Shown here piece by piece: positions 192 to 37,234 of a stretch of DNA of 64,000 nt; the stretch's first letter is position 1; the number at the start of each line of letters is the position of its first letter. Source of the DNA: Octopus bimaculoides (lineage: Eukaryota). The notes below the pieces were generated by a model that was not told the DNA's origin, did not search any database, and saw only the letters and a list, made by a program, of their open reading frames with translations. The stretch is from NCBI RefSeq assembly GCF_001194135.2, contig NC_068983.1, positions 167,747,529 to 167,811,528 of the forward strand. Reading direction: 5' to 3'. Both the position numbers and the translations under genes were made by a program.

Positions 192-311
192 GTGTTAACC
201 GAGAGGGATTTGATCGAGAGGGTTATGACTTGGCAGGATATAACAGGTATGGATTTGATCATGATGGTTATGATCGGGATGGTTTCAATGTTTCTGGCAG
301 AGATCGTGATG
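192..311 (+). CDS. Exon 1 in window: pentapeptide repeats (GVNREGFDREGYDLAGYNRYGFDHDGYDRDGFNVSGRDRDG)
   Basis: Acceptor tttctgcag|g, phase 1. Probable GC donor GATG|GCAAGT; an in-phase GT donor AAG|GTTAGT at 380 is the alternative. Confidence 0.8.
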
Positions 312-1090
312 GCAAGTTGGACGCTTCTCTTATTTTTGAGAAACAATACTTACAACATAGACATTGTTTAAACAGGAAAGGTTAGTATTGACTATATATA
401 AAAAATTATATGACAAATTTGGGTATTTGTTAGAGTTGCAATTTTAGTTTTGTAAAATTTTAATATTTCATTTACTTTCAGGATTTCTGACTTAAATTCA
501 CAATAACTTTAGTTTAAAGTAAATTTAACTCTTTAAGCATTCCGATTGCTCTGTCAAATGTAATATTTATATTGTTTTGAATGCATCCTGCCTTATCTCA
601 TAGCTTTGAGATTTCGATATGATTACAGTAACATTGGTAGGTGTGAGATGCTAGATCTAGCTGGTTTGAACATAAAACTAATAGAATATTTGAGGCCGGA
701 TATGGCTGGATTAAATGATAAAAGGTTTAACATTAGTGGTTAAGGAAATATCTAATGGATTGCATACAAGAAGAAATGGGGTTAGGAAAATATCTTATTA
801 AGTGTGGGCATGGATCTGTCCTTAAGAAGTTCTCTTTGCAGCCAGGTGGCTTCATGTCCAGTCTCACTGCATGACACCTTGATCCAGTGTCTTCTACTAT
901 GGCTTTGGACCAAACGGTACTTTGTGAGGGAATTTGGTGTATGGATTAAAACCAAGCCCATCATGTCAATCCCACTCGTTCGAATAGACTGGAGATCATT
1001 ACTTCATTTAGAAACAATGAACTGCCAAGACATGAACTGCTGAGCAAACTCATTAAGTGGGGAAATATCAATTCACTTACAAACACTCAT

Positions 1091-1999
1091 ATATCATCAT
1101 CATCATTTAACATCCGCTTTCCATGCTAGCATGGGTTGGACGGTTTGACTGAGGACTGGCGAACCAGATGGCTACACCAGGCTCCAATCTGATTTGGCAG
1201 AGTTTCTACAGCTAGATGCCCTTCCTAACGCCAACCACTCAGAGAGTGTAGTGGGTGCTTTTATGTGCCACCGGCATGAAGGCCAGTCAGGCAGTACTGG
1301 CAACAGCCACACTCAAAATGGTGTCTTTTACGTGCCACCTGCACAGGAGCCAGTCCAGCGGCACTGGCAATGATCTCATTCGAATGTCTTTTTATGTGCC
1401 ACCGGCACAAGTGCCAGGAAGGTAACGCTGGTAGCGATCACACTCAAATGATACTATTTACGTGCCACCGGTACAGAAGCCAGACAGTTGCTCTGGCAAC
1501 GATCACACTCGAATGGTGCTCTTTGCATTCCACTGGTAAAGGTGCCATCACAATTTCGCTTTCGCTTGCCCCAACAGGTCTTCGCAAGCCGAGTTTAGTG
1601 TCCAATGGAGGAGATGTTGGCATGGGTGCCAGTTGTCGAATTTGGTTCGATTTCGATTTCACTTGCCTCAACAAGTCTTCGCAAGCCAAGTTTAGTGTCC
1701 AATGAAGGAAAGGTATGCATAAGTGGGCTGGCTACACCCCTGGCAGAGGCCTCGGATTATGGTCTCACTTGGCTTGCTGGGTCTTCTCACACACAGCATA
1801 TTTCCAAAGGTCTCGGTCACAAGTCATTGCCTCGGTGAGGCCTAATGTTCGAAGGTTGTGATTCACCACCTCATCTCAGGTCTTCCTGGGTCTACCTCTT
1901 CCACATATTCCCTCAACCGCTAGGATGTGACACTTTTTCACACAGCTGTCCTCAGCCATTCTCGCCACATGACCATACCAGCACAATCGTCTCTCTTGC
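1091..1999 (-). mobile_element. RTE-clade LINE 3' fragment (ORF2 C-terminus, 3' UTR, (GAT)n tail), cut by N-gap
   Basis: Minus-strand peptide ERRLCWYGHVARM...GRGRPRKT; begins with catcatcat-ttaacatccgctttccatgctagcatggg, a tail motif repeated many times in the window. Confidence 0.8.
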
Positions 2000-2099
2000 N
2001 NNNNNNNNNNNNNNNNNNNNNNNNNNNNNNNNNNNNNNNNNNNNNNNNNNNNNNNNNNNNNNNNNNNNNNNNNNNNNNNNNNNNNNNNNNNNNNNNNNN
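2000..2099. other. Assembly gap (others at 28644-28871, 33386-33953, ~55295-55304)
   Basis: Runs of N. All are intronic, and exon phases close across them without needing a hidden exon. Confidence 0.98.
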
Positions 2100-2338
2100 T
2101 ATATATATATAATGGTAGAACACCTGTCATATCAACAGGAAATGTGGGTTTGAGTTGCACAGCCTTTGACTTTTTCTATCCAAAATGGTTTTTCAGCCCA
2201 ATATTTATTGGCTATTATTTATAGATTTATGTGCTTCAAGAGCCGCTGTTCAAAAAGAAATTATGTCATGTTCTGTCAAAAAATTTATAAATTTTTGACT
2301 TCAGTAAAAAAAGAAATGTTTTTTTTTATCCATTTCAG

Positions 2339-2581
2339 GTCTTACTAAAGATGGCTATGACCGATATGGTTTTGATATGTATGGATATGATTTAGAAAAC
2401 TGCAATTATTCCTTTAAGGGACCATTTACTACACTGTTGATGCATCGTGTTTGGGAAATTCTTCATACCCAATCGCATGAATTTCTTGTAACTCTGACTA
2501 AAACCTGTCAACCTTTGGAACAACTTCCAAATGTTTGGTATAAGCAATTTTGGATGGAACTCCCTGAAGCATTTGTGGTAG
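2339..2581 (+). CDS. Exon 2: repeats plus CNYSFKGPF module (GLTKDGYDRYGFD...KQFWMELPEAFVVG)
   Basis: Acceptor atttcag|gt, donor G|GTAAGT, phase 1-1; overlaps ORF 2377..2712. Confidence 0.88.
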
Positions 2582-4813
2582 GTAAGTATTTATTTAATGT
2601 TTTCCTTTTATTATTTAATTGTGAAGAATTACATGGAAGCACTCACACAATTATGCTGATGCTTCTAGTGGCCATGAATTGGGAACAGAAAAGGAAATAT
2701 ATCTTATTGTAGCTAAAATTCAATACTTTTGGTAACAAAGCATTGAATAAGTAAAAGAGAATTGAATTCAACAATTATCAGAAAGAAATGACCAATATTC
2801 TTAATTCTATCTCCAAAAATTGAAATGACGCTGAATAAAAATGAAAAGCATTTTTTTTCCTGAATAAGGAATTCTGAATAAGGATGTGCACGCTTTCCAA
2901 GTAAAAATAACTTCTCTGTAGAAGCTGAAAAAAATTGTGTTTTGAAGTTAGAGATGAAATGGCTAAATAGGATTTCTTTGCAGCAGATGTTTATATTAAC
3001 TTTATTGTGTTACCAGATTTGTTTTGAAATATTCTGCCTTGATTTCAATTAATTTGGAGAATAATGAAGAATTTAGTGAAATAACTTTTGTCATCATTAA
3101 GTTCAAAAGAAATGTGGTGTCAAAAAGGTTAAGAGCATCTAGCCATAGAAACTGTGTCACAACAGACAATTGGAGTTTGGACAGCTCTCCAGCCTTGCCA
3201 GCCCCTGTCAAACTGTCCAACTCATGCCAGCATGGAAAATGGACATTAAATGATGATGATGGTAATAATGACATTGTAGTTTCTTTCTTTTTTTTTAATT
3301 AATATGTATCTAAAGAGCTATAGCATATTTTTCAGAGTTTTAATAGAATTATCTGAAAAAATCTCACAACAGTTATTTCGGATGAGTAGAATTCTTTGCC
3401 TAAATCAGAAAGGAAGTTGGTTTAACCTCTTTCATACCAATCCACTTGAGGTGTTCCTTGTTCTATGATAACACAAACTTTCTGTTTTAAAGTGATCTAC
3501 ATTTAAACCTTCCATCAGAATTTCATATTAAGTTTCAATGACAAGTTTGATAATGACAAACTTATCTAACTAAATCCCTTCTTTTTTCAAAGGCAGAGTA
3601 TTTCAACAGCAATATAGTGACTAAAGGACTAAGGATTCATTTTTGCAGGACTCTAATTTCAAGATATCTGTAGCAAGAAACACACTGCAATTACCATATG
3701 TGGTTCTTCTACATTATAGAAATGAAATATAGAATACCAATATGATGCTTGCACATGTTTTATACTGATTTATAAAAGATTTTCTTCAATATTTACTTGC
3801 TAACTTTATGTTTGCCTTTCTCCTGTTGTGCTATTGACCAGCACATCTAGATCACCGATATTGCCACCCAACATCTCTTCTTGCCTTAATCTCACTATCT
3901 ACCCTTACAAGTCTAGGGTGCCCTCCAGCTTTTCTTTCTTATATTACCTTTCACCCACTGCTCCAACCTTCCCTTTTTCTCTAACTCTCCTCCCTTCATT
4001 GCCTCCTTAACTGGAATACTTTCTCTGCATCCACACTGTTCTTCCCCATCTACCTCCTTCATACCCTCCTAGTTCTATTTTCCTTGTTACTTTTCCAGCA
4101 TTCACTTTTCTTTCTCTCTGTCCTCTTCCCCATTTTCTCAGCCTCCTCATCTGGCTACCCTTGTAACACACCACATCTCTCCAGATTCTTTACTACCCTT
4201 GTTTATTTCTTCTATTTTCGTCCCCCTTTCACCATAATCTTCTTTTTCTTTCTTGCCCTTATAAAGTATTTTATTGGACACTCCCACATCACCTTGCTAA
4301 TCTATCCCTACCTTTCTCATTAAACCCTGACTATCTTTGCTTCCCTTGTTTTCTGCCATATTCCATTGTCATGCAGTGTCTGTTAATCTCTGCAGTATCA
4401 CTCTCCTCACAATTATAAATCTATTCCTCTCATCTTCATCCTTTCTCATCAGACACCAAAAAATCATCACACACTCTCCCTTCTAATCTCCTGTTTTAGG
4501 GATTATTTAGGCTCATAGTTTTCCTTGTTGCAAGATGACCTCACTGGGACTGGTACCACAGAAAAAAAGAAAAACCAGTCCACTCTGTAAAATGGTTGGT
4601 GTTAGGAAGGGCATCCAGCTATAGAAACCATACTAAAACAGACAGGGAGCATGGTGCATTTCTCCAATTTGCTGGGTCCAGTTGAACCATGCAAACTATG
4701 CCAGCAAAGAAGGTGGATGCTGATAATGAGGATGAACTTTTTGTTTTGAATAAGTAAAAAACCTTTGATTTCCTTTTAGTCATTGCTACTTTAACAAAGT
4801 TTGTTTTTGTCAG

Positions 4814-5059
4814 ATTTGATCAAGTCGGATGTCCCTCTTCAGCCAGAGAGCAACATTTTGTCTCAAAGAATTTGTTTCCCAATTGAACCATACGTGTCTC
4901 CATGTCCTTGTAATAGAGTTACGACATGTACCATCAATCTCTGTTTGGATGCTGAATGTCCAAGCTATCCCCAAGCCAATTGCTTTGTTGATGTCTGCAA
5001 CGAATGCTCCCCAGTTTGGTACTTGAAAGGAAGGACTGTTGACTGCGAAACGGTCAGAG
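4814..5059 (+). CDS. Exon 3: Cys-rich module (CTINLCLDAECPSYPQANCFVDVCNECSPVWYLKGRTVDC)
   Basis: Acceptor ttgtcag|at, donor AGAG|GTAAGT, phase 1-1. Confidence 0.9.
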
Positions 5060-6275
5060 GTAAGTAACACAAAGAAATAATACCCGGACAATCAAGTGAT
5101 ACAATTTATACCTTGCATCCTGCAGACTCTGTCACCCGAAAAACTAATTTAGGATAAAAGCTTCTTAATTTCACACCAAGATCTTTTTCTAAATTGATTT
5201 TATTATTAAAATATTTGGCACAATTCTTGAAATTTATTTAGATTATTTTGAACAACTAGGATTAATATTTTCTGAAAATGCTTTAAATCATCATTCTATC
5301 ATGAAAATGGTTGAGAAGATCCCAGCAGAAATTAAACTTAGAGCACGAAGAATTGGAAGAAATATAGCAAAGCATTTCTTCCAATGCTCTGATGATTCTG
5401 TTTGCTGACTGCCTTTAGATGACAAATTATCCTGATGTACACAATTGAAACAACGTCGAATTATTATAGCCATCTGTGTACCACATTTAATGTATATATA
5501 TATACTGTTGAAAGCATGATGCTGTAGTGAGTGAAGAGATCTTTACAGACATGTTAAAACACACAATATCTATTGCTACTAAATGGAAATTGTCTTAGCA
5601 GTGACACAGGAGAACACCAGACACATTCTAACCTTCTGAGGCCTTGTCAAGGGTGTGTTCTCGCTCCCACCATGCCTAAATAAAATTATCTCCTTCTGAC
5701 ATATAGGGAACAGGGAGTGATTTATTCATTGATATTGTAGAGAGCTTGCTGAACTGTAAATAAACTCAGTGCATGCAATTGAAACAGCAAATAATCATCT
5801 ACATACATATGTAACATATGTACGGCTATTACAGCTCAGAAAGCTTTCCACAATACCAGTGAATGTGTTATTCATTGTTTCAAAGTATGAATTTTATCTT
5901 GACAAACAGGTGCACAGTATTGACAAACTCTAAGAATTCTGAAACATGTCTGACATTCTTACATGTCACTGTTGAGATAATGTTCACATTGCTCTAACAT
6001 ATTCTGTTTTTAATAAAACTTATCTATGAAGATGTTTTCTCTCAAATAAGAACCACTGCATCATACCTTTCAGTAGTGTATATAAAGATGAACTGTGGTA
6101 CACAGATTATTATAATAATGTTTGTCTGGACTTGCAGGGGTAATAGTGTTTCTTTGAACCTGTCATAGTTATACACCCGCAGCCTCTGTTTTTGCTTCTG
6201 CTGTATCTATACTTAGCCCCAATAACAATTTCTTAGCTTGAGGTTTTTTATACTTTCCTTTCATATTCTTAACAG

Positions 6276-6434
6276 ATTATTGTCATCCAAATCCATGTCA
6301 ACATGGTGCCACATGCATCCAATCTGTGTGGCCTGCAGAACCTTGGTTAGTCTCCTGTAAATGTCCACCTGGTTATGAAGGGGATCATTGCCAGTACAAA
6401 TCAAAAGAAATTTGTTACCTTCCTTTACAGAAAG
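6276..6434 (+). CDS. Exon 4: EGF-like domain (DYCHPNPCQHGATC...CKCPPGYEGDHC) plus start of Kunitz domain (ICYLPLQKG)
   Basis: Canonical six-Cys EGF spacing; acceptor ttaacag|at, donor AAG|GTAAGT, phase 1-1. Confidence 0.93.
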
Positions 6435-6572
6435 GTAAGTCACTTTGTCATGCTCATTGTTCTATGTCATTATTACAGGGTATGACAAAGAAATCAAACC
6501 CTTCCAGATTCACTAGTCTTGATAAAAGTTACAAGATGCAAAATATGGCACCAGTCCAAACTAATAATAACT

Positions 6573-7350
6573 AAAAGCAAGAAATGGTAAAGCATTAGCT
6601 TGATGAAGGCACCATTATTATCTGTCTAACTTAATGAGTGCCATACCAATAACTGTGTAGAATATGGGTGGTTTTTCTGTTGCAGCCTGTATTTTGGATA
6701 GATTTTAAAATGTAAACACTGTCACATATTTTAATTACTTATTTACAGTTTTTTGTGTGCATTTATAGTAATGTGCTTAAAGAGTTTATTTTACAACTGA
6801 TGTGGTTAAGGTTATTTGTGAAAGTTGCAAGTCAATGAATGCAGGAAGGGGATTTCAGACTTCCACTGTTCTGGGGGAAGAAGGACTGAGCACAAAATAT
6901 GAGTGATAAGATGAGGAAAGAAGAGTGAGTTGGGTGTTTGTGAGTAGTGGTATTATGATATTAGTCAGTTCTGAAGAATAGAGACCACTGTTAAAGATAG
7001 GCAAGGTGAGAAGCAGAGGTTGCCAATACCAAATTTCATTTAGGTATGTAACTAGCAGGACACATCATTGACAAGCCTGAAGGAAGCTGAAATTCACCTG
7101 GCATTCTCATGAATCATTGATATATACCTATTGCTTTTTCTAACACAGCATATCTATGAAGAGATTTTCTCTCAGAGAAAAACCTTCACATAAAAAGCAC
7201 TGATGTTGGTGCCATGTAAAAAGCACCAAAATACAGGCTGCAACAGAAAAACCTCCCATATTTTACACAGTTATTAGTATGGCACTCGTTAAGTTAGACA
7301 GATAATAATGGTGTCTTTATCAAGCTAATGTTTTACCATTTCTTGCTTTT
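6573..7350. repeat. 125-bp inverted repeat pair in intron 4 (6573-6697 and 7226-7350)
   Basis: Manual alignment to the reverse complement: 118/125 identical, 528-bp spacer. Confidence 0.9.
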
Positions 7351-7659
7351 ACTCGTTCAACCCATGCTAGCATGGAAAACAGACGTTAAACGATGATGAT
7401 GATGGTGGTGCCATATAAAAAGCACAGGTGATAGTGTCACATAAAAAGTACCTAGTACATTCTTTTGGCGTTAGGAAGGGCTGCAGAAACTATGCCAAAT
7501 CAGATCCTGAAACCTGGTGCAGCCCCTGGCCTTGCCTGTTCCTGTCAAGCTGTCCAGCTCATGCTGGCTGGACATTATATGTTGATAATGATGATGATGA
7601 TGCCGTTCAGTGATGTATGTAAGTTAAGAATGGTACACAGTTGGCTATAATAATCATAT

Positions 7660-8270
7660 TTGTATGAGCTTTGCAGGATGTGGTGTTCTTCACTTCTGAC
7701 CGTTTCTTTGAATGCAGTTTTGTCTTTTGTCTGGCAGTAACAATGGCAGCAGCACTGGCTCAGAGTTGTCAGGAATTATTCTCCGGCTGTGAAGTGGAGA
7801 AATGCCAGTCTTTGGATGCAGCAGTTTTTGTCATGTTGAGGATATACCGTTACCAAGATGGTGAATCCAATCAGTTGTAGTGACGTCGAGGGTTCTAGCT
7901 GCATGCTGCTCATGTTTTAAGAATGGAATGGGCTGCAGTAATGTCTTCTTGATTTTAATGTTTTGATTTCATTTGTGCTTTTGAAGAAGACAAAATTGAT
8001 AAAATCTCATTGAAGAATGTTTGTGAGGTCTCTATCCATGGAATCATTAAAGGTTTGGGGTGGAGAGGGGACTAGGCTGCATGGGGATAATTTTTGGTTG
8101 TTGGGGACTTAGGGCAGAATGGAGGGTGATAAAATTTATGTATGAGTGCTTGAAGGTGACATTGAGTAGGTCTTCGATGAATAAGAGGAAGAATGTGGGG
8201 TTCAAAACTGAACCCTGGGGTACACGAGACATTATGAAATGCGAATCATAGAGAACTCCATCAATACATA
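7660..8270 (-). mobile_element. Decayed non-LTR (CR1/Jockey-like) reverse transcriptase fragment
   Basis: Minus ORF 8047..8232 contains VPQGSVLNPTFFLLFIEDLL, matching the RT motif GVPQGSVLxPxLFxxFIxD. Confidence 0.6.
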
Positions 8271-8385
8271 TTGTGATAATGATTTTAAATATTTCCTTTT
8301 GCTATCTAAAGTTTTTTTTATACAGTTATTTATCAATTTATAAAGACATAGCTGTAAAAACCCAGCATCATTCTCTCTTTTACAG

Positions 8386-8593
8386 GTTCCTGTTCAAGGA
8401 ATGTGAGTCGTTGGTACTTTGACTTCCATCAATCAAAATGTGTCCAGTTTGACTATTCTGGTTGTGGGGGCAATGCTAATCTATTTGAGACACTTACTGA
8501 TTGCCAGAAAAAATGTGTTGTTGGTGCTTGTTGCTACCGGCAGCAACTTAATCCAGGAGTTACCATTGGCTTTGGGCCTGATGGCTATGATAA
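8386..8593 (+). CDS. Exon 5: rest of Kunitz/BPTI domain (SCSRNVSRWYFD...GCGGNANLFETLTDCQKKC) plus GACC segment
   Basis: Kunitz motifs RWYF and GCGGNxNxFxTxxxC; acceptor tttacag|gt, donor AA|GTAAGA, phase 1-2. Confidence 0.93.
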
Positions 8594-9968
8594 GTAAGAT
8601 TAATTTCTCTAATTGTTTGTTGTATTATCCTTTTAAGCCTTAAGATTTATTTTTGCTCTATCACTAAGGGTTATTCAGCCACTCTTGCATTAGTGTTATG
8701 GGAAAATGCTTGCAGTACATTTTGTGAAACCATTGATGTTAGAGAGGGCATCAAGTTGTAGAAACCAAGTCAGATAACACACTTGAGCAAGCATTTAGTC
8801 TTTGGGATATCTCTCAGATTATGGCAATCCATCCAATCCATGCTAGCATGGAAAAACAAATGTCAAGTGATGTTGATGACAACAATAGTTTCATTTGTGT
8901 GAATATCAGTTAATAAGAAAACTGAAGAGCCGGTAAATTTCCCCCTACCCATGTGAAGTAAACCTGAAATTATAGATACACAAATTTAAGACTCTATAGA
9001 TGGTTGGTGCCTGAGTTTCAAGTTTATATATGGCATAAATTATTGACTTTAGGTTAAATTTTCTTCTGTCTCTGCTACAAGACACTGATGATTCTATTAT
9101 TGTGTTCTGGGTCTCTAACTCTTGCTTGAAGTACTGATGTTTCTATGGATTTTCTATTATTTATTAACTGACAATTACTTAAGCTGATTGAAATTTCAGC
9201 TGCTCATCAGAATGGATTGTTTCACTTGGTTTGAAATTTTTGACAACTTATCTAAGTCAGTCCACGAAAAAAGAATTGAACCTGTAGTCTGCACCAAACA
9301 AATAGTTGGTATGGCTTTGGGGTTAAAAAGATTGCTTCCCAGTCACATGGTTTCAAGTTCAGTCTCACTGTGCAACACCCTGGGAAAATGTCTTCTATAG
9401 TCTTTGGCTGACCAAAGCCTAGTGAGTGTATTTGGTAGATGGAAACTGACTGTTGTGTGTGTGTGTTGTATTGACATCATGCAATAGTTGTAAATAAGTG
9501 CCACTATTATATAAGCAATGTTCTTCATTATCAGTATTCCATGCCATAGAGAAATATTATCTTGCTTGCTAATAGGTGAGGGTTGGTAACAGGAAGGGCA
9601 TCCAGCTGTAGAAAATCTACCTCAATGAATTCCTTGTGACCTGGAAAAGTATATGAGAATGATTAACAGATCAGATGAGAAAGTTGAAAGAATCATACAA
9701 TCTTATTCTTGTCTATGAATCTGTAATTCTGATAATCTGTTTCCTGGTGTGGGAGAGCTGGAGGAGACCACAATAGTGGACTCTCTGGAACTTGTTGAAC
9801 ATAGATGCTCTTATCATTCACCATCCTCTGCAGGGTCAATATAATAAACACCAGTTATACAATGATCCAATTCAAATATATAAATTCCTCTCAAAATTTG
9901 AACCAAAACCCAGTCCAAAGAAATGGAAATAATTAAAATGAATAATTTTCCGAAATTTTGTCTTTCAG

Positions 9969-10078
9969 GTATGGGTTTAATGTAAAAGGTTACAACCAGT
10001 TAAGGAAAATGTTCAATGCGAAAACTGGAATGAAAATGGGAATCAACAGATTCAAGAAGAATGGCTATGATTGGCATG
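9969..10078 (+). CDS. Exon 6: pentapeptide repeats (YGFNVKGYNQ...NGYDWHG)
   Basis: Acceptor tctttcag|g, donor ATG|GTGAGG, phase 2-1, matching both neighbours. Confidence 0.82.
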
Positions 10079-10355
10079 GTGAGGCATTTTACATGTCAGT
10101 TTTAATACATGTATTGTGCATGCATGATGGTGTGTGTGTGTGTGTGTGTGTGTGTGTCTTGACATCAATAAATAGTTGTAAATGAGTATCATCATAAAAG
10201 CAGCGAATTCTATATTTGGTTGTGATTCTTTTGTAAATGAGAAGGCTTCATGTTTCATTTATCTTATTAGAATAAATGATGGTGGATAATTATATTTAAA
10301 AAAAAAAAAATTTCCTATTTCTTGCCTGTATAAAGATTTTTCAAAGTGTAAGATA

Positions 10356-10406
<51 letters not shown>
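10356..10406. repeat. (ATT)n microsatellite
   Basis: Directly visible pure tract. Confidence 0.95.
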
Positions 10407-10408
<2 letters not shown>

Positions 10409-10699
10409 CAGAGACCCTGATTATACATACTTGACGTTATGATGATGATAATCATAAAAATAATGATGAGCTTGGGCATCCAGCTGTAGAAGTTTTGCAA
10501 AAGCAGACATTGGACCTCATTGCAGTCCTCTGGCATGTCAGATTCTGCTGAACCATCCAACCCATGCCAGCCTGGAATGTGGATAGTAAATGATGATGAT
10601 ACTCAGGTGCACTAAAACTCATCAGAAAGAGGTAAAAGAGGGGACAGAAAGACAACAACAATAGCCAAAATTACATGTATAGTAGACAGAATGAAATAT

Positions 10700-11130
10700 T
10701 AAAAAGGGAACGTTAAATGAGCCCTAAAGGAGAAAGAATGTCTAGACACATCAGGAGTAATGTTGAAGAGCCTAGAATTTTTGAAGGGTGCCATGTCCTA
10801 ATGGCTAATAACAAAAGCTGGTAGTTTATTCCATGCTTTAACAATTCTGAGTATGAACAAAATCTTTCTGAAAGTTATGGGTGAGGTGTTGTTCTTCGAT
10901 TTAATGAGCATGTTCAACAGAGATAATGGATTTAAAAAGAGGACCAAAATTATTGTTGGAAAGGTAACGGATAATCTTCTTGTGGGATTCTACCAAGTCA
11001 TTTATCTATACATTGTTGAAACTTTAGTGCGTCAATGCTCAGAGAAGCAAGATATTGAAAATATGGTAAGTGACTGTTGGAGAGTTTGTCTCCAGGATGA
11101 ATATCTCTGCAAAGATTAAAAGACAATCAG
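10700..11130 (-). mobile_element. CR1/L2-like LINE ORF2 C-terminal relic
   Basis: Minus-strand translation LRIVKAWNKLPAFVI matches the RxVxxWNxLP terminal motif; interrupted by stops. Confidence 0.55.
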
Positions 11131-11412
11131 TTTAACATAGCTTCTGTCAACCCTTTTCTTATCATATTTCTGTTGAGATGCTCTATGCTTCTTTCAATTA
11201 ATTTTAAATATAACAAACAATTTAGTATAATAACTTAGTTATCATTAAGCTAGTGATAGGAACATAAATTGTGACTAAGGTTTGGTGGAAGATTTTAATT
11301 CAGAACTTTTGAAAGCAAGACATTTGTACTACAAAGCCAGAGGTGGTTTCAAGTGGGTTGGTATCAAAAGGGTTAATCCACTATAGTTTCTGTTAATCTT
11401 ATACGGTTTTGT

Positions 11413-11650
11413 GGAGGTGCATAGCCTAGTGGTTAGGGTGTTGGACTTGTGACCGTAAGATTGTGGTTTCAGTTCCTGGACTGGGTGATGCATTGTGTTC
11501 TTGAGCAAAACACTTCAGTCCACTCAGCTGGTAAAAATGCATCTCTGGATGGGATGCTGGTCCTGTGACGGACCAGCATCCCATCCAGAGAGGAATATAT
11601 CTAGATCAGAGAAACCAGGAGGCTGGTCCTTCTGTTCCCTATTGACTAAC
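11413..11650 (+). mobile_element. tRNA-headed SINE copy
   Basis: A-box-like TAGCCTAGTGG, degenerate B-box GGTTTCAGTTCC, followed by a SINE body; no complete cloverleaf. Confidence 0.6.
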
Positions 11651-11727
11651 TTTTCAGTTTTAGCTTTTATCATGAAGCAATTTTGTTTCTTTCTGATCTG
11701 TGAATACCAATGGTTTCTCTGTTGCAG

Positions 11728-11893
11728 GTTATGACAAAAATGGATTCAACTCTGTTGGTTATAATAGACTAGGCTACAATTCTGAAGGTTATGATCCATT
11801 CGGATTCAACATGACGGGATATAGCAGAGAAGGTGAGTTTGATGGCATGATCGACTATGATGATGATGGCTACGATGAAGAAGGTTATAACAG
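11728..11893 (+). CDS. Exon 7: pentapeptide repeats (GYDKNGFNSVGYNRLGYNSEGYDPFGFNMT...GYDEEGYNR)
   Basis: Acceptor gttgcag|gt, donor CAG|GTGAGA, phase 1-2. Confidence 0.88.
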
Positions 11894-14793
11894 GTGAGAT
11901 TTTTTATTATTATTTATTGTTTTTGTTTTCATCATCATTGTTTTAATGTCTGTTTTTCCATACTTGTATGGGTTGGATGGAATTTGTTGAGGCACATATT
12001 CTTTGACCCGATGCCCCTTCTATTGCCAACCCTCACCTGTTTGTAAGCAAAGTTTATTTTCCTGATAGCCAAACAGGTTTTTCACAGAAGACTGAAAACA
12101 AACAACATTGCCTGTACGACAGTGATGCTCATTTACAACTATCACAAGATGTCAAGACAAGGTACAAACTCTCCCTCTCCCTCACACACACACAAGCTCA
12201 TGTACAAACCACAAACAAGGCAATAAATGAAATCCTGTCTCTGAAGGAGGTAGTGACAGTGTTTCCTATCAACGGTTAGTGTATAGGAAGGTTCATTCGA
12301 GAATTTGGTAAGTTTTGTTGCTATGAGAAGTGAAGAATCTAACATTTTTGGTAGTTGCACTTTGTTGGGTGAGGAAGAGAGGGGCAGGTGTAACTGTCAT
12401 TTTGGTTCAGAACATTGTACGAAGTAAGGAAAAACCTGGCACTGTCATTTTGGTTACAATAGTGAGAGTTGCTGTTGATCCAATCAACTAAACTGCTTGC
12501 TCATGAAACTGACATGGAAGTGGCTGAGTACTCCAAAGACATGTGTGTGTCCTTAATGTAGATTTCAGGGAGATTTGGTGACACCCAGAATGTGACAAGG
12601 CTGGTCGTTTGAAATATAGGTACTACTCATTTTCACCAGCTGAGTGAACTGGAATAATGTGAAATAGAGTGTCTTGCTGAAGGCTACAACACATCACCAG
12701 GTATTGAACTCATGACCTTACGATCGTGAACTGAATACCCGAACCCTTCAGCCCTGCACAGCAGGATGAAGGTTGGCTAGGGTTAGGGTTAGGGATATGG
12801 ATGTGCAACGTGGCAAAAGCCTGGATTCTGTGATTAAGAAGTTTGTTCCACATCCACATGACTTCAGGTTCAATACCACTGTATGGCACTTTGGATCAAC
12901 GTCTTCAGCTTAAGTTGCATTGGGATGGAAACTATGGACATCCAGTGTGTGTGTGTGTAAATGTTTGTCTCCATGTTGATACAGCTGGGGCAGTGGTGAT
13001 GTTTACAGCATTGCTACATGAACAGCACACTCTCTGACTTGAGTTGTTATGGTGTGTGAAGATCAGCAGAATAAAATATACCTACAAAAATTAAAAAAAT
13101 AAATAAATAAGGGTCACTGGCAAGAGAGGCATTCAGCCATTAGAATACTGGCTCAGTAAGTCTCTTCTAACTGATGCAGGCATGGAAAAAGTGGATGTAA
13201 AGATGATGGTATTGTCAGTGGGGATTACATATTATCCAATTCTGTGCATTAAAATTAATACCAAAGATCAAAATAATTAAACCAAAAATCAAAACTCCAT
13301 TAACTCAAGGCTCACTAAGCAATGAGGATTAAAATATATGCATAGTTAATATGCTTATGTACATTCGAAGCTGGTGATTCTCACTGCAGAAATCTCTCAG
13401 GTGAGAGATTCTCTATATTTCAATCAACACTGCCTAGTGTGCTTCTAATTAATTAATTCTAGCTTGACAAAGATTTGCATACATCAGCAAATGTAGTATT
13501 TACTGTTTAAGAATTGTAGTTCTTAATGGGTTGTGAACAGTGGATTCAGTTTCTCTGCTGATGAAGCACAACAATGCCAAAATACACAGCTTACAGTCTA
13601 ATGATGTCATTGATAGCCCATTGATGTGGGTTTTCACACACTTTGTCTGTGAAGGAGAACTTCTCTCCTGAAATAATTTCCTCAGTAAAGGTCTTTTCAT
13701 GTCTGCATGTACACAAATGGGTTAAATATAATTGTACACACCTATATTTGAATCAACGCTGCTTGGTGCTCCTCTAGAAAATTAATCTCAGCTTGTCAAA
13801 ATTTTGCACACATCAGCAAATTTCCTATTTTGCTGTTTAAATATATAAAATATATAAATGGTAGTTCTTAGAGGACTGGGAATAATGGAATCGGTATCCA
13901 TGGTTAAATAGATGAAGGATCAAACTTGTGGATAAGATGCAAATTTATCACTAATAACATTTCCAGAATAAATATAATTCCTGATATCTGTTCTTCAAGG
14001 AAAGTGAGGTAATAAAGAATTAAGAAGCCTGGGGGCACATACTTGCATGTACATAGACACAACGTACAGATTAGGATAAAGGGAGTTAAGTTATTCTTTT
14101 TTTTTTTCCTAGTCCAGTTAATTCAAAATGTAAGTTGACAAGAATCACCAGGTTTTCCTTTTCAGTTTCTTTGCATTTTCCCATTGGTTGTCATTTATTC
14201 AAATCATAACAAATTTTTTATAATCTTTTGGGGTTGTAACTTGAGATAAAATTGCATTTTAATAAAAAGAAATGATGAGTCAAATGATTACATAAAATCA
14301 CAGAATATCATTCTTATTTTGCCTAATTTCTCACCTGCATCACTCATTTCTATCACAATTTTGAAGTAATAATGTCTGATTGATGAAAAATATGTAAGGT
14401 GATGCCAGCAAATAAAAATATAGAGGAAGATGATATATTAGCGTATGTTAGTTATTTAGTGATCCTATAATATTTTGAGAAAGGTTCCCCTTTCAAAAAA
14501 TATTAAAAAAAAGAATAGAGTTCAAACAAAATATATTGTTACCTGCCAGCCATTTTGGTAGCCTTCTAAATGCCAATTATTTAATTTTGAGTCTCGTTAC
14601 TGGCAGGCCATTAGAATGTCCTGCTATTCAAAATTATATTAATTGGCAGGAAAAGCTAAGTTAACTTTAACCTAACTAAGATACCATTACTCTAAATCCA
14701 TTCTATATCAGTGTATATGTGATGGAATGTTGTGATGTAAAATAAAATTGATTCAAACAGATTAAGGAAACTTATTTCTGTTTCTTTTTACAG

Positions 14794-16569
14794 AGCAGGG
14801 TTCAATTGTGAAGGTGTTAACCGAGATGGTTTGGATATTTATGGACGTCATGCTGGCTTCAAGTATTCTTGCATAAGAACCACAAGGAAAAGGTGTCGAC
14901 ATTTGGAAACTGAAGATGATGTTCAAATTGTTCGTTTTTCTCCAGGGAAAAAATGTGAAGATGTCAGTTGCAAGCCAAATTGTATGTGTTGGTTTAATAA
15001 TGAATTCCATAGGATTTGGGATAATTTCAATGTAGGCTGTGAGAAATTTCAGTGTCACTTGGGAGGGTTTTCACAAATGAATTCTTGTCAAAAACATTTT
15101 CAACGCAAAGAGATTCGTGACATGAGTTTTGATGAAATGAAGCGTTACCAACTTGTTATCCAGAATCTACAGCATGAAAAAAGAAACGGTAAATCTGTGT
15201 GGTATGAATTTGCTGAAATGTATTCAGAATATATTCCTCAAGCTTCAGGAAATCCTTTATTTTTGCCATGGCACCGCTACTTTTTGTTTATGGTTGAAAA
15301 GTCGATGCAAGATGTTGAATGTGGTGTTGTGATCCCATATTATGATTGGACCCTTGATATTGGTGTCTTGAATAAATCAGTTATTTGGTCATCCAAATAT
15401 TTTGGTGGTAATGGTGAAAATGGAACAGATTGTGTCAGATATCATCCATTTAAGTCTTATCATCCACCATATTGGACCCCTTGTCTCCGTAGACACTTCA
15501 ATTCTTCCGTACATCTTCCAGACGCAATTCATGTTTATTTGGCTATACAGGAAAGTACCTTTAGTGATTTTTCAGCTTACATGGAATCAATGCTGCATCT
15601 TTTCCAGATGTGGGTTGGAGGTCACATGAACTCACCTCTCAGTGCTTACGACCCCCTTTTCTATTCACATGTAGCTTTTATTGATAAACTCTGGGATGAT
15701 TGGCAGAGGAGTCATAAGAAAGGTTTGCTGCGATTTCCTCTTAATTTTCGATATGTTCCTATGGAACCTTTCAAAGTTAGCCCTGACGATGTATTAGATT
15801 GCAAAAAACAAATCTGTATAACCTATCTGAATTTACCATTTGGGTCACCATGTAACCAGACCAAAATAAAGACCTTTGGATATGGTAGTGATAGTTATGA
15901 TCGTCATGGCTTTGATAAAAATGGTTATGATAAAGATGGATTTGATGTCCATGGAATAAACATTGATGGCTATATTGATCTCAGAGGAATATATAATAAC
16001 GAGGGATTTGACAAAGAAGGATTTTCTAGACAAGGTTTTGATAATATGGGCTATGACAGAGATCTCTTTCACGAAGACGGTTACAATCCTGATGGCTTTG
16101 ATGTTGCTGGCTATGACAGATCTGGTCATAATAGATATGGTTCCAGCAGAATCAAAACGAATGTCTTTAGTGAACATGTTTCTACATTCAGAAAGAATGA
16201 GTTCAATGAACTTGGATTAAATAACTTGGGTTTTAATAACAAAGGCTTTGACATTTTTGGTTTTGACAAGGATGGATTCAATCGCTTTGGTTGCAATTAC
16301 TATTTCAATGGCCCGTTTTATATAATCATATACCAGTCACTTAAGAATAAACTTAGCGAGATAAAATCCATGCATTCTTTGATCAATATCCCAAGGTTGT
16401 GTCCTGCAGTGTCGCAGCTTCCTCATTGGATGTATAAAGTTTATTGGTTGAACCGGCAAAAAACCATTCCAGAAGTTTTAGCAATCATGGCTCTGGACAG
16501 ACTGAAAAATCCTTATTCATTTGAAGATGTCTTTGACAAAATTTGGATTCCTCCTGTTCCTGATCATAG
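14794..16569 (+). CDS. Exon 8 (1,776 nt): Cys-rich segment, tyrosinase/type-3 copper domain (~15104-15830), pentapeptide repeats (~15878-16294), CNYYFNGPF module
   Basis: ORF 14831..16573 contains RKEIRDMS, FLPWHR, IPYYDW, YFGGNG, CLRR, WVGGHM and DPLFYSHVAFIDKLW. Acceptor tttacag|a, donor AG|GTAAAC, phase 2-2. Confidence 0.95.
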
Positions 16570-18499: not shown

Positions 18500-18594
18500 G
18501 TTTTGTTTGGAAACAAACTTCTTTTCAAAATGTCCCTTAGGTCATGCTCCTGTTAAATGTTCATCAGATTTGTGCTTTGATACGATTTGTCCGG
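18500..18594 (+). CDS. Exon 9: first half of second Cys module (RFCLETNFFSKCPLGHAPVKCSSDLCFDTICPG)
   Basis: Acceptor ttttcag|g, donor CCGG|GTAAGA, phase 2-1; aligns with exon 3. Confidence 0.88.
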
Positions 18595-21155: not shown

Positions 21156-21248
21156 GTATATCTGGTGCCATATGCCGAGTGAACTATTGTGGGACCTGTT
21201 CGGTTGAATGGTATGATGCTCGCTCTGGTGATTTTGTAGAATGCCAAG
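21156..21248 (+). CDS. Exon 10: second half of Cys module (GISGAICRVNYCGTCSVEWYDARSGDFVECQG)
   Basis: Acceptor tttctag|gt, donor AAG|GTACTT, phase 1-1; completes the Cys spacing seen in exon 3. Confidence 0.88.
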
Positions 21249-33993: not shown

Positions 33994-35373
33994 CGGGGAG
34001 GTGTAATGGCCCAGTGGTTCTGTTGTACCTGTGTTTCAAAAGGCCAGCCTTGTCACACTCTGTGTCACATTGAATCTCCTTGACCACTACGTTAAGGGTA
34101 CATGTGTCTGTGGAGTGTTCAGTCACTTGCATGCTAATTTCACAAGCAGGCTATTCCGTTGATCAGATCAACTGGAACCCTTGTTGTTGCAACCGACGGA
34201 GTGCCATGATATGTATGATTGCAGCATGAAAGACACATGTTAGCCATTGAGAAACACACAAAGTCTGTTGATAAATGTTTCAGTGAAGTTAACAGTTTTT
34301 GTGTATTTCTGAATGGCCAATTTGTGCCTTCCATCCTGTAATTGTTTAAGCTTCAGCACAAAGTCTCAGTCCAAGCCACTTATCTGACAATGATACCTCA
34401 GTTTGATATATATATACATATATACAATAGACTATACTGTACTGTACTGCTGGACTCTCCTGTTGTAGACAACAATTGAGAGTTCCACACCTTCTTGTTG
34501 AACAACCTGCACAGATAATTTTGCTTAGTGATCAAATGTTTGTGCTGTCTATTAGGTAGGTGCACTGGTAAAATCAATACTATAACTGTTCAGAAAATAG
34601 ATTCCATCATATTTATTATATTCATATAGACTTGGGCATGCTGTCGAAATACTTGCTTAAGAAATTGTTCTCTTCATAGTCAGTATGTGTGAGAACACAT
34701 CAGTTAGCTATGAATGATGTGATCAGACTGTAGGCTGTATGCATCACAAACTATGGATATCATAACCACTAATAATACCAAACCATTTCTGCAGCATGTT
34801 TTTCCACGTCTGAGTGGACACAACAATGTTAAATATGATTTTATATGACTCTATAGTCATCCTTATTACCATCATTTAATGTCTGATGTGGGTTCAAGGA
34901 CTACATCACGTTCCAGTGTCTGTTTTGGCATGGTTTCTATGACCAGATGCCTTTCCTAATGCCAACCACATCACAGAGTGGATTGGATGCTTTTTGTTTT
35001 TCATGCCTACCAGTATATTGCTGAGGTTGTGATGCAGCTTTGCAAGGCTAGAAAACCAAGGGATTTGTGTGAAGAGACAAGAGAGATGGGGGTGAGCAGG
35101 TTCCTCTTGTTGTTGTAGAGGAGCTAAACAGACACATTTAGAATAGAGTGAGAATGATCAGTAGCCACTGCAAGTCCAGGTATGAGGTGAGAACTAGGAG
35201 TGTGGGTGGGTGGGTGAGTGTTTGTAAGAGCGTATGGGGTGAGAGATGCAGGGTGGGGGAGGTAGACAACAATTGTATTATAGTGTAAAAAAATAAAAAG
35301 AAGTCAGTTATTCTATTTCTATTTGTTTCTGTCAATGTTACCAATCTGTAGCCCTGTTATTATTTCTTGAAAG

Positions 35374-37137: not shown

Positions 37138-37174
<37 letters not shown>

Positions 37175-37234
37175 GCGCATTAGATTGATCCAAATTTACG
37201 TTTCCTCATATTAACACTTTTCCTCTTTGCTCAG

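What the first reader, a model, noticed from the sequence alone, without database searches (positions are those of the whole stretch)
192..16294. Three blocks of strict 5-residue G-[FY]-[DN]-x-x repeats, rich in Tyr and Asp, flanking the tyrosinase domain
Seen: period-5 repeats in exons 1-2 (GFDRE GYDLA GYNRY GFDHD GYDRD GFNVS), exons 5-8 (GYDKN GFNSV GYNRL GYNSE GYDPF GFNMT) and after the tyrosinase domain (GFDKN GYDKD GFDVH...GFDKD GFNRF, 15878-16294). The period is kept across introns while nucleotides diverge, so selection acts on the protein. Two blocks share a similar interruption (FDGMIDY / IDGYIDL). Inference: a beta-solenoid or stacked-turn rod with aromatic ladders. DxDGxD-like strings could bind Ca2+, and the many Tyr could be DOPA/dityrosine cross-linking substrates for a tyrosinase acting in trans.
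Basis: partly seen in the sequence, partly recalled or inferred. Interest (0 to 1): 0.7.

Follow-up and report, generated by a model that had tools for sequence, protein, structure and literature searches.

The report
Conserved five-residue turn repeats, octopus kielin-like gene
The repeats are real: short arrays of a Gly-aromatic-Asp/Asn five-residue unit, kept in register from octopus to sharks, that are predicted to fold on their own. They sit beside copper-less tyrosinase-like domains in a giant secreted kielin/chordin-like protein. The same uncharacterised unit occurs in over a thousand, mostly bacterial, protein families.

Summary
A 10-exon model on the + strand (192-21248, all AG/GT) gives an open 1095-aa frame with 35 strict G[FY][DN] motifs. 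Of 34 spacings, 25 are exactly 5; shuffles give 1.7 motifs and 0.003 such spacings. The N gap (2000-2099) is intronic. The model aligns without gaps (83% identity) to Argonauta hians kielin/chordin-like protein, so no exon is lost.

The gene fills the whole window and continues downstream with about 20 VWC exons. The blocks are conserved position by position in hemichordate, spider, shark and about 60 other orthologues, while the DNA shows almost no period-15 repeat.

AlphaFold2 predicts block 3 with pLDDT 90-93, alone or in context. It has no helices or strands, only single bridges between successive pentads, and no PDB analogue by Foldseek.

No Pfam family matches the animal blocks. The same pentad profile (G, Y/F, D/N, R/K, D/E/N) occurs in 1487 protein clusters, many of them bacterial (helicase, exonuclease and VirB10-like fusions).

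The flanking tyrosinase domain keeps 1 of 6 copper histidines, and Tyr and Phe interchange freely. The DOPA/dityrosine and Ca2+ ideas therefore gain no support.

Best reading: an autonomous stacked-turn structural module of an uncharacterised repeat family.

The parts
192..380 (+). Exon 1 of the window (phase 1). Tail of repeat block 1: GVNRE GFDRE GYDLA GYNRY GFDHD GYDRD GFNVS GRDRD G..., then a 25-aa non-repeat linker. Block 1 begins upstream of the window, after the first tyrosinase-like domain.
   Evidence: Identical to the last 64 aa of UniProt A0A0L8IDI7 (P0008). AF2 pLDDT 84-87 for residues 11-40.
2000..2099 (.). Assembly gap (N run) inside intron 1. It does not interrupt the coding sequence.
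   Evidence: The phase 1 to phase 1 splice makes a Gly codon. The alignment across the junction to Argonauta P0201 and Ptychodera P0001 is gapless.
2339..2581 (+). Exon 2. Last three pentads of block 1 (GYDRY GFDMY GYDLE, 2353-2397), then the first copy of a conserved unnamed 'C-N-Y-x-F-x-G-P' domain.
   Evidence: No Pfam hit.
4814..5059 (+). Exon 3: Cys-rich module (ICFPIE...CPC...C...C...C...C..C).
   Evidence: Conserved in Ptychodera and spider. A second copy is encoded by exons 9-10.
6276..6434 (+). Exon 4: EGF domain (about 6281-6388) and start of the Kunitz domain.
   Evidence: Pfam EGF at residues 229-264 and Kunitz_BPTI at 272-323.
8386..8593 (+). Exon 5: Kunitz/BPTI domain, then the start of repeat block 2 (GFGPD GYDK..., from about 8556).
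   Evidence: alignment.
9969..10078 (+). Exon 6: block 2 continued (YGFNV KGYNQ), a 20-aa irregular insert, then NGYDWHG.
   Evidence: The insert has low AF2 confidence (residues 363-380 below 50).
11728..11893 (+). Exon 7: core of block 2: GYDKN GFNSV GYNRL GYNSE GYDPF GFNMT GYSRE GEFDGMIDYDDD GYDEE GYNR. The N-M-T sequon at 11808-11816 is conserved as N-[LIM]-T in argonaut, hemichordate, spider and shark.
14794..15193 (+). Exon 8, first part: last pentads of block 2 (AGFNC EGVNR DGLDI YG), then a Cys-rich VWC-like segment.
   Evidence: AF2 pLDDT 77-92.
15194..15709 (+). Tyrosinase-like domain (second of two in the protein). It has the tyrosinase fold but keeps only 1 of 6 copper-ligand histidines (A1 Tyr, A2 Ser, A3 His, B1 Leu, B2 Gln, B3 Val).
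   Evidence: Pfam PF00264, 85 bits. Residue-by-residue alignment to hemocyanin units. Foldseek TM 0.72-0.74 to bacterial tyrosinases. The losses are shared by orthologues.
15878..16294 (+). Repeat block 3. About 16 pentads with one 7-residue unit (RGIYNNE), a roughly 25-aa linker, then 5 more pentads (GLNNL GFNNK GFDIF GFDKD GFNRF).
   Evidence: AF2 pLDDT 87-95 in context and 90-93 alone. No PDB analogue.
16295..16569 (+). Second copy of the unnamed 'CNY' domain (CNYYFNGPFY...IWIPPVPDH), at the end of exon 8.
   Evidence: AF2 predicts it helical with pLDDT about 88-93. No Pfam hit.
18500..18594 (+). Exon 9: first half of the second Cys-rich module (RFCLETNFFSKCPLGHAPVKCSSDLCFDTICPG).
21156..21248 (+). 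Exon 10: second half of the Cys-rich module (ISGAICRVNYCGTCSVEWYDARSGDFVECQ).
25166..63622 (+). Continuation of the same gene: about 20 VWC (chordin-type Cys-rich) exons. High-identity pieces colinear with Argonauta kielin/chordin-like protein reach its residue 3102 (window 58957). Weaker VWC-like hits run on to 63622.
   Evidence: tblastn. Pfam scan of P0201 (20 VWC plus VWD).

Best explanation
The three blocks are arrays of a five-residue structural unit. Position 1 is Gly, position 2 is Tyr/Phe, position 3 is Asp/Asn, position 4 is often Arg/Lys, and position 5 is Asp/Glu/Asn or a second aromatic.

Proposed mechanism (inferred): each unit makes one tight turn. The string aromatic-[D/N]-x-x-G-aromatic is the classical sequence of a type I turn with a G1 bulge. 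The aromatic residue that closes one turn opens the next. An array is therefore a compact stack or ribbon of turns held together by a ladder of aromatic rings. It needs no disulfides and has no long strands or helices.

Predicted, not measured: the array folds on its own.

Shown: in this gene, the octopus orthologue of the ~3800-aa secreted 'kielin/chordin-like protein', the arrays lie in the N-terminal third. One follows each of two copper-less tyrosinase-like domains and leads into an unnamed 'CNY' domain. One lies between a Kunitz domain and the second tyrosinase-like domain.

Inferred role: rigid, glycosylated spacer or docking modules that fix the geometry of these domains. They are not enzyme substrates.

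The unit is not special to this gene. It belongs to a widespread, uncharacterised repeat family. Its longest arrays (44-79 units) are in bacterial proteins, many fused to HelD/UvrD-type helicases, DnaQ-type exonucleases, zinc ribbons and VirB10/TrbI-type secretion proteins.
For: - Reality and periodicity.
- Protein-level selection: almost no DNA tandem repeat. Register-true conservation in hemichordate, spider, shark, teleosts and molluscs, with near-invariant Gly every 5 residues and D/N two residues after each Gly. 83% identity with no gaps to argonaut.
- Order: AF2 pLDDT 87-95 for block 3 in the 1095-aa model and 90-93 for the block folded alone, with the same bridge pattern.
- Turn-stack pattern: DSSP shows no helix or strand of 3 or more residues. 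There are only single bridges, spaced as if residue 2 or 3 of one pentad pairs with residue 2 or 3 of the next (F25/I30, N31/I36, Y82/H87, N88/S93).
- Aromatic ring rather than the phenol is conserved.
- Surface-exposed position 3: a conserved N-x-T sequon in block 2.
- Generic module: the position profile is the same in octopus, 68 metazoan orthologues and about 110 other, mostly bacterial, repeat proteins. Exhaustive phmmer gives 1487 clusters at E<=1e-3 and 523 at E<=1e-10. Bacterial fusion partners are listed.
- Gene identity.
Against: - No coordinates could be inspected. The turn-stack geometry is inferred only from DSSP strings, pLDDT and turn propensities.
- AF2 can be over-confident on periodic sequences.
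- Parts of block 2 (residues 363-424) are predicted with pLDDT below 50.
- Foldseek's zero hits may partly reflect masking of repetitive or coil-like structural strings, so 'no known analogue' is soft.
- No experimental datum exists on any member.
- 'Spacer or docking' is the default role for such modules, not a demonstrated one.
- Homology between the animal and bacterial arrays cannot be separated from convergence for a 5-residue unit.
Confidence: 0.55

Rival explanations
1. Cross-linking substrate. The repeat tyrosines are oxidised to DOPA or dityrosine, by the neighbouring tyrosinase domains or by another tyrosinase in trans, so that the protein is cured into an insoluble matrix.
For: - Tyr is 6-11% of the blocks.
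- The protein is extracellular and Cys-rich.
- VWC-only 'kielin/chordin-like' proteins are the most abundant proteins of the argonaut eggcase matrix (bioRxiv 10.1101/2021.07.10.451900). It is not known that this gene is one of them.
- Tyrosinase-like domains are adjacent.
Against: - The adjacent domains lack the copper sites: 1 of 6 and 3 of 6 ligand His. The losses are shared by orthologues.
- Tyr and Phe interchange at 20 of 21 aromatic columns.
- The same pentad fills bacterial helicase and exonuclease fusions that have no tyrosinase domain.
Confidence: 0.1
2. Calcium-binding repeat. Asp/Asn side chains of successive pentads coordinate Ca2+ and the array is rigid only when loaded, as in RTX beta-rolls or thrombospondin type 3 repeats.
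For: - D/N is near-invariant at position 3 and D/E/N is common at position 5.
- D-x-D-G strings are present, 6 in the blocks.
- The animal protein is extracellular.
Against: - The canonical DxDxDG motif occurs once.
- No hit to TSP_3, HemolysinCabind or EF-hand families at E<=10 in 40 orthologous blocks or in the whole model.
- Position 4 favours Arg/Lys, and net charge is only -0.4 to -0.5 per pentad.
- One position-3 Asn carries a conserved glycosylation sequon.
- Many carriers are bacterial proteins without a signal peptide.
- AF2 predicts a confident fold without ions.
Confidence: 0.15
3. Divergent member of the pentapeptide-repeat protein (PRP, Pfam PF00805) superfamily. [quoted passage not shown]
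For: - The period is 5.
- Gly and D/N fall in the same register as in the PRP consensus [STAV][DN][LF][STR][G] (PMC8145042).
- phmmer of a bacterial array hits designed consensus PRPs at E=3.6e-6 and natural PRPs at E about 0.5.
- One bridge per pentad is also what DSSP gives for PRP faces.
Against: - No PF00805 hit for the octopus protein (E<=1), for six other family proteins scanned at E<=0.01, or for 40 orthologous blocks (E<=10).
- The inward-pointing central L/F of PRPs corresponds here to Arg/Lys, and the small i-2 residue to Tyr/Phe.
- Foldseek finds no PRP, and nothing else, in the PDB for the confident block model.
- Runs in the animal protein are only 5-9 pentads, about 1-2 coils.
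Confidence: 0.1
4. Low-complexity, intrinsically disordered linker. Its periodicity would reflect replication slippage and composition, with no defined structure.
For: - Biased composition (G, D, N, Y, F).
- No regular secondary structure in the models.
- Parts of block 2 and the inter-array linkers have pLDDT below 50.
Against: - Column-by-column conservation between animal phyla as distant as molluscs, arthropods, hemichordates and vertebrates.
- No DNA-level tandem repeat.
- pLDDT 90-93 for the isolated block.
- Indels between octopus and argonaut are nil over 1095 aa.
Confidence: 0.1

Closest known systems
Pentapeptide repeat proteins (PRP; Pfam PF00805; Rfr-fold quadrilateral beta-helix, e.g. 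MfpA, Qnr, Rfr32)
   Same: Tandem 5-residue period. Gly and Asp/Asn recur at fixed positions in the same relative register. Mainly bacterial with some eukaryotic members. Arrays of at least 8 units.
   Different: The two inward-pointing PRP positions (small i-2, Leu/Phe i) are Tyr/Phe and Arg/Lys here. There is no PF00805 match. The confident AF2 model finds no PRP structure by Foldseek.
DotG/IcmE central repeat region and Pfam PF25296 'Decapeptide repeat region'
   Same: This is the nearest sequence neighbour in the PDB (7muc, E=8e-11). Some bacterial G-F-D-x-x arrays pass the PF25296 cut-off (P0203, 61.8 bits against 45). Some carriers are VirB10/TrbI-type proteins like DotG (P0205, P0103, P0109).
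   Different: DotG repeats are 10-mers (AGF[ST]AxELKx) rich in Ala, Leu and Lys. Most G[FY][DN]xx arrays score below the cut-off (25-34 bits). The octopus protein and 40 orthologous blocks do not match at all.
Kielin / kielin-chordin-like protein (KCP, CRIM2): secreted proteins made of many VWC (CR) repeats with a C-terminal VWD, known as modulators of BMP signalling (from my own knowledge)
   Same: The window's gene is colinear with proteins that NCBI names 'kielin/chordin-like' in Argonauta hians (3774 aa: 20 VWC plus VWD) and Lingula anatina. It has a thrombospondin-N-like and VWC start, judged by eye in P0008.
   Different: As I recall them, the vertebrate proteins have no tyrosinase-like, Kunitz, pentad-repeat or 'CNY' modules. 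Here these fill the first ~1900 residues. Teleost and shark relatives carry the tyrosinase-like, pentad and CNY part in much shorter predicted proteins.
Type-3 copper tyrosinases and mollusc hemocyanin functional units (Pfam PF00264)
   Same: The domain between blocks 2 and 3 has the tyrosinase fold and matches the HMM.
   Different: Five of the six copper-ligand histidines are replaced, so catalysis or O2 binding of the usual kind is not expected.
Type I turn + G1 bulge beta-hairpin loops (e.g. the N-P-D-G turn used in designed hairpins; turn statistics of Sibanda, Hutchinson and Thornton, from my own knowledge)
   Same: The same local string: aromatic, then Asp/Asn, two free residues, Gly, then aromatic. 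The AF2 model's bridges are spaced as if they join the residues flanking each such loop.
   Different: In known proteins this is a single loop between two real strands. Here it would be repeated back to back with one-residue 'strands'. No solved example was found.

Membership tests
Pentapeptide repeat proteins (PF00805) | At least eight contiguous 5-residue repeats | tested here: met
   The longest uninterrupted Gly-every-5 run is 9 pentads in the octopus model. Bacterial relatives have a median of 44.
Pentapeptide repeat proteins (PF00805) | Consensus [STAV][DN][LF][STR][G]: Leu/Phe at the centre and a small residue two positions before it | tested here: not met
   The profile is G / Y,F / D,N / R,K / D,E,N. 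With G and D/N in register, the centre is Arg/Lys and the i-2 position is Tyr/Phe (consensus from PMC8145042).
Pentapeptide repeat proteins (PF00805) | Match to the family HMM | tested here: not met
   No PF00805 hit for the 1095-aa model at E<=1, for six family proteins (two bacterial carriers, three animal orthologues, P0008) at E<=0.01, or for 40 orthologous blocks at E<=10.
Pentapeptide repeat proteins (PF00805) | Right-handed quadrilateral beta-helix, four repeats per coil | tested here: inconclusive
   Foldseek of the confident block model against the PDB gives 0 matches at E<=10, so no PRP. However, coordinates could not be inspected, and repeat masking may lower sensitivity.
PF25296 Decapeptide repeat region (DotG-type) | Match to the family HMM above the gathering score (45 bits) | tested here: not met
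   There is no hit for the octopus model or the 40 orthologous blocks. Bacterial arrays score 25.6, 27.6, 33.8 and 61.8 bits. Only P0203 passes.
PF25296 Decapeptide repeat region (DotG-type) | 10-residue period | tested here: not met
   Spacing of successive motifs is 5 in 25 of 34 cases and 10 in 2.
Kielin/chordin-like protein (whole gene) | Long series of VWC (chordin-type CR) repeats | tested here: met
   About 20 VWC-like exons lie on the + strand from 25166 to 63622. They are colinear at 69-89% identity with Argonauta P0201, which has 20 Pfam VWC matches.
Kielin/chordin-like protein (whole gene) | C-terminal VWD domain | not testable with these tools
   The window ends before that part of the gene. 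The argonaut orthologue has a VWD at 3453-3598.
Kielin/chordin-like protein (whole gene) | Binds BMPs and modulates their signalling | not testable with these tools
   This needs binding and signalling assays.
Type-3 copper tyrosinase (PF00264) | Tyrosinase central-domain fold and HMM match | tested here: met
   85 bits against a cut-off of 22.6. TM 0.72-0.74 to B. megaterium and Streptomyces tyrosinases.
Type-3 copper tyrosinase (PF00264) | Six histidines binding CuA and CuB | tested here: not met
   The alignment to hemocyanin units gives A1 Tyr, A2 Ser, A3 His, B1 Leu, B2 Gln, B3 Val. The upstream copy has A1 Asn (placed by eye), A2 His, A3 His, B1 Ala, B2 His, B3 Gln.
Ca2+-binding repeats (EF-hand-like DxDxDG, thrombospondin type 3, RTX) | Canonical Ca2+-ligand motif or family HMM match | tested here: not met
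   [DN]x[DN]x[DN]G occurs once in 329 block residues. No such family matches at E<=10.
Ca2+-binding repeats (EF-hand-like DxDxDG, thrombospondin type 3, RTX) | Measured Ca2+ binding | not testable with these tools
   This needs ITC, 45Ca overlay, or CD with and without EDTA.

The most novel reading that the evidence does not exclude
G-[YF]-[DN]-[RK]-x pentads define a fold class of their own. It would be an autonomous, disulfide-free stack of back-to-back type I/G1-bulge turns with an aromatic ladder. It has no representative in the PDB and no proper Pfam family. It is shared by bacterial helicase, exonuclease and type IV secretion proteins and by an ancient animal family of kielin-like proteins, where it pairs with copper-less tyrosinase-like domains.
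Probability: 0.4. Interest if true: 0.7.

Novelty: new variant of a known kind. Interest (0 to 1): 0.55.

Why it matters
Short tandem repeats that fold into regular rods, such as pentapeptide-repeat, RTX and hexapeptide beta-helices, are useful scaffolds, and several proved to have specific functions.

This is a second, distinct pentapeptide repeat. It has about 1,500 carrier families (50%-identity clusters), position-specific conservation across distant animal phyla, and a confident predicted fold with no solved analogue. I found no published description.

It also flags an unstudied, ancient animal protein family. The family combines kielin-like VWC arrays with two pseudo-tyrosinase domains, Kunitz domains and an unnamed 'CNY' domain. 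Its members are annotated only as 'uncharacterized' or 'kielin/chordin-like'.

For genome annotation, it shows that the public O. bimaculoides model A0A0L8IDI7 stops at window position 380. That model holds only the first quarter of a ~3800-aa gene.

Tried and rejected
- A word-index search with the repeat-free CNY plus Cys-rich tail found nothing. It cost one of the three searches. A profile of seven orthologues then worked.
- Full-text searches for the repeat as literal strings or motif notation, and for tyrosinase plus Kunitz plus pentapeptide repeat, gave nothing relevant. One call failed on a term that was too long.
- NCBIfam has no family for the repeat. It gives only weak DotG and MxKDx-pentapeptide echoes far below their cut-offs.
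- Foldseek of the whole model returned only tyrosinases and hemocyanins, so it said nothing about the blocks.
- Foldseek of the block against viral predicted structures gave no significant hit (best E=2.1).
- Model coordinates are not exposed. I could not measure rise per unit, handedness or ring stacking.
- I considered whether block 3 plays the role of the active-site-shielding C-terminal domain or 'caddie' of tyrosinases and hemocyanins. The position in the chain fits, but I could not test contacts, so I leave it as an idea.
- Horizontal transfer from bacteria was considered and left open. The pentad profiles are the same, but a 5-residue unit carries too little signal to separate descent from convergence.

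Full report
**1. What is in the sequence**

The window is eukaryotic DNA of low GC content, rich in an interspersed SINE-like element. On the + strand, ten exons with canonical AG/GT borders join into one open frame of 1095 codons. The exons are 192-380, 2339-2581, 4814-5059, 6276-6434, 8386-8593, 9969-10078, 11728-11893, 14794-16569, 18500-18594 and 21156-21248.

The last 64 residues of UniProt A0A0L8IDI7 (Octopus bimaculoides, 985 aa) are identical to window exon 1. The window is therefore from that species or a very near relative, and the public gene model stops at window position 380.

The 1095 residues align without a single gap, at 83% identity, to residues 824-1918 of 'kielin/chordin-like protein' of Argonauta hians (GAB1599713.1, 3774 aa). 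The argonaut protein stays colinear with the window up to about 58.9 kb. Weaker VWC-like hits run on to 63.6 kb, about 20 VWC exons in all. The whole window is one gene.

**2. The assembly gap**

The N run at 2000-2099 lies inside intron 1. Exons 1 and 2 are both phase 1 and join to make a Gly codon. The junction ...LNRKG|LTKDGYD... is matched residue for residue in argonaut and in the hemichordate Ptychodera. No exon is hidden in the gap, and the frame is continuous.

**3. The observation**

- The model holds 35 strict G[FY][DN] motifs. Of 34 successive spacings, 25 are exactly 5. Shuffles that keep composition give 1.7 motifs and 0.003 such spacings. Shuffles inside each block give under one motif against 9, 13 and 12 observed.
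- No such strings occur anywhere else in the six frames of the window.
- The blocks are not perfectly 'strict'. Runs reach 9 units and are broken by 7-residue units and by inserts of 20-40 residues.
- Tandem Repeats Finder detects only one weak 15-bp array in the blocks. The period is a property of the protein, not of recent DNA duplication.

**4. Domain context**

Within the window the order is:
1. the tail of block 1;
2. an unnamed domain starting C-N-Y-x-F-x-G-P;
3. a Cys-rich module;
4. EGF;
5. Kunitz;
6. block 2;
7. a VWC-like Cys-rich piece;
8. a tyrosinase-like domain;
9. block 3;
10. a second CNY domain;
11. a second Cys-rich module;
12. the VWC series.

Upstream (P0008) lie a signal-anchor-like segment, a thrombospondin-N-like region, a coiled coil (these three judged by eye in the sequence), then VWC, EGF, Kunitz, the first tyrosinase-like domain and the start of block 1. 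The first ~1900 residues are thus a duplicated super-module: (EGF-Kunitz-[pentads]-tyrosinase-like-pentads-CNY-Cys-rich).

**5. Conservation**

- The same architecture, with the blocks in the same places, is found in Ptychodera flava (1515 aa) and the spider Caerostris (1689 aa). The spider lacks block 1.
- It is also found in the shark Chiloscyllium, in Amia and many teleosts, in the sea slug Elysia, in the brachiopod Lingula and in many unnamed assemblies.
- All carry names such as 'uncharacterized protein' or 'kielin/chordin-like'.
- In a 70-sequence alignment the glycines of block 3 are near-invariant every five residues. An Asp/Asn column follows two residues after most of these glycines, and the flanking irregular pieces are conserved too.
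- A glycosylation sequon inside block 2 (GFN[MLI]TGY) is kept from octopus to shark.
- Every one of the roughly 60 orthologues with the region keeps 7-23 pentads.

**6. Structure prediction**

- With the 70-sequence alignment, AlphaFold2 gives mean pLDDT 75.6 and pTM 0.72 for all 1095 residues.
- Block 3 (811-890) has pLDDT 87-95. The first 40 residues of block 1 have 68-87. The end of block 2 has about 77. The irregular middle of block 2 and the first CNY region, where the alignment is only two or three sequences deep, fall below 50.
- Block 3 folded alone with 40 orthologues gives pLDDT 90-93 over residues 11-80, with the same DSSP pattern. The predicted fold does not depend on neighbouring domains.
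- DSSP shows no helix and no strand of three or more residues. It shows only single bridges, spaced as if residue 2 or 3 of one pentad pairs with residue 2 or 3 of the next.
- Foldseek finds no PDB chain at E<=10 for this model, and nothing significant among viral predicted structures.
- I could not read coordinates. The geometry I propose, back-to-back type I/G1-bulge turns closed by an aromatic ladder, is an inference. It rests on that bridge pattern and on the well-known turn preference for aromatic-[D/N]-x-x-G-aromatic.

**7. Range of the repeat**

- The first search already pulled over 200 non-orthologous proteins, mostly bacterial by their names and domains, through the repeat alone. Reading them shows long arrays of the same unit, for example GFDVNGYNKFGYDKFGYNKEGFDKDGYDKRGFN... 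over 560 residues.
- The position profile is the same in octopus, in 68 animal orthologues and in about 110 other, mostly bacterial, repeat proteins. It reads G; Y/F 0.75-0.85; D/N 0.8-0.9; R about 0.35 plus K 0.10-0.24; then D/E/N, or an aromatic in the animal proteins.
- An exhaustive phmmer of block 3 against 1.84 billion representatives gives 1487 proteins at E<=1e-3, 523 at E<=1e-10 and 61 at E<=1e-30.
- Partners include HelD/UvrD-type helicases, DnaQ-like exonuclease, zinc ribbons with membrane segments, DUF6273, Sel1, beta-propellers and VirB10/TrbI. A snail FERM protein also carries the repeat.
- Several carriers start directly with the array and have no signal peptide, so the unit also works in the cytoplasm.

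**8. Comparison with known families**

- No Pfam or NCBIfam model covers the animal blocks.
- PF00805 (pentapeptide repeats) never hits. With Gly and D/N in register, the two inward-facing PRP positions are Tyr/Phe and Arg/Lys here. That cannot build the PRP core.
- The nearest curated model is PF25296 'Decapeptide repeat region'. One bacterial G-F-D-x-x array passes its cut-off and three others fall short.
- The nearest PDB sequence is the DotG/IcmE repeat (E=8e-11). [quoted passage not shown]
- A survey of animal tyrosinases noted very long sequences with 'kielin/chordin-like' domains as outliers, without further study (PMC11667028).
- I found no paper on the pentad.

**9.

- Copper sites. 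The tyrosinase-like domain in the window has the fold. Aligned to hemocyanin units, its six copper ligands read Tyr, Ser, His, Leu, Gln, Val. The upstream copy keeps three of six. In orthologues B1 is never His, and A2, B2 and B3 are usually not His. These are pseudo-enzymes, so oxidation in cis is unlikely.
- Tyr versus Phe. In the 21 aromatic columns of block 3, Tyr averages 0.43 and Phe 0.45. Only one column is at least 90% Tyr. Selection is for a ring, not for a phenol.
- Calcium. The canonical motif occurs once, no Ca2+-repeat family matches, the blocks are only mildly acidic, and Arg/Lys is favoured at position 4.
- Both ideas remain testable but have no support here.

**10. Verdict**

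The finding is real and better than chance by a wide margin. It is a conserved, predicted-ordered, disulfide-free repeat module inside an unstudied giant secreted protein. It belongs to a large repeat family that has escaped description.

The mechanism I commit to is a self-folding stack of turns with an aromatic ladder, serving as a rigid spacer or docking element. It rests on prediction and inference (confidence 0.55).

I rate the finding a new variant of a known kind (pentapeptide tandem-repeat modules), with interest 0.55.

Noticed in passing
window 2398-2581 and 16295-16569: An unnamed domain of roughly 60-95 aa starting C-N-Y-x-F-x-G-P follows blocks 1 and 3. It is conserved in spider, shark and teleosts and has no Pfam match. 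AF2 predicts the second copy as helical with pLDDT about 88-93.
   Followed up: partly
window 15194-15709 (and the upstream copy in P0008): Both tyrosinase-like domains of the protein have lost copper-ligand histidines: 5 of 6 in the window copy and 3 of 6 upstream. The losses are shared by about 60 orthologues, so this is a conserved pseudo-tyrosinase.
   Followed up: yes
window 179-63622, + strand: The whole window is one gene, the octopus orthologue of the 3774-aa Argonauta 'kielin/chordin-like protein'. About 20 VWC exons lie downstream of the finding. The window ends before the VWD domain.
   Followed up: yes
window 192-380; UniProt A0A0L8IDI7 (P0008): The public O. bimaculoides protein model ends exactly at the donor site of window exon 1, just before the intron that holds the assembly gap. 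It therefore represents only about the first quarter of the gene.
   Followed up: partly
window 28644-28871, 33386-33953, 55295-55304: Three further N gaps lie inside the VWC part of the gene. Argonaut residues 2059-2091, 2151-2177 and 3018-3048 have no high-identity match near them, so VWC exons may be missing or unread there.
   Followed up: no
window 1118, 3216, 7356, 8832, 10556, 11955, 16948, 21339, 25944, 35752, 35890, 47604, 55838: There are 13 copies, on both strands, of an interspersed element containing TTTCCATGCTRGCATGGGTTGGA. It is often next to a CAT/ATG trinucleotide run and always lies in introns. None is expected by chance.
   Followed up: partly
window 11808-11816 (N-M-T) and 288-296 (N-V-S): N-glycosylation sequons sit on the position-3 Asn of a pentad. 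The block 2 sequon is conserved from octopus to shark, which implies that position 3 is solvent-exposed.
   Followed up: partly
P0002 (spider Caerostris darwini), residues about 555-600: The spider orthologue has no pentads after its first tyrosinase-like domain but keeps blocks 2 and 3. Block 1 is therefore dispensable in at least one lineage.
   Followed up: partly
P0205, P0103, P0109, P0340 (bacterial proteins): VirB10/TrbI-type (DotG-like) proteins carry G[FY][DN]xx arrays where Legionella DotG has its decapeptide repeats. This hints at an interchangeable spacer role in type IV secretion machines.
   Followed up: partly
P0121-P0169 (Amia, many teleosts), P0003 (shark): The tyrosinase-like, pentad and CNY module is widespread in ray-finned fishes and a shark, as proteins of 500-1100 aa. 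No tetrapod protein appeared among the hits. This suggests loss in tetrapods, which was not tested.
   Followed up: no
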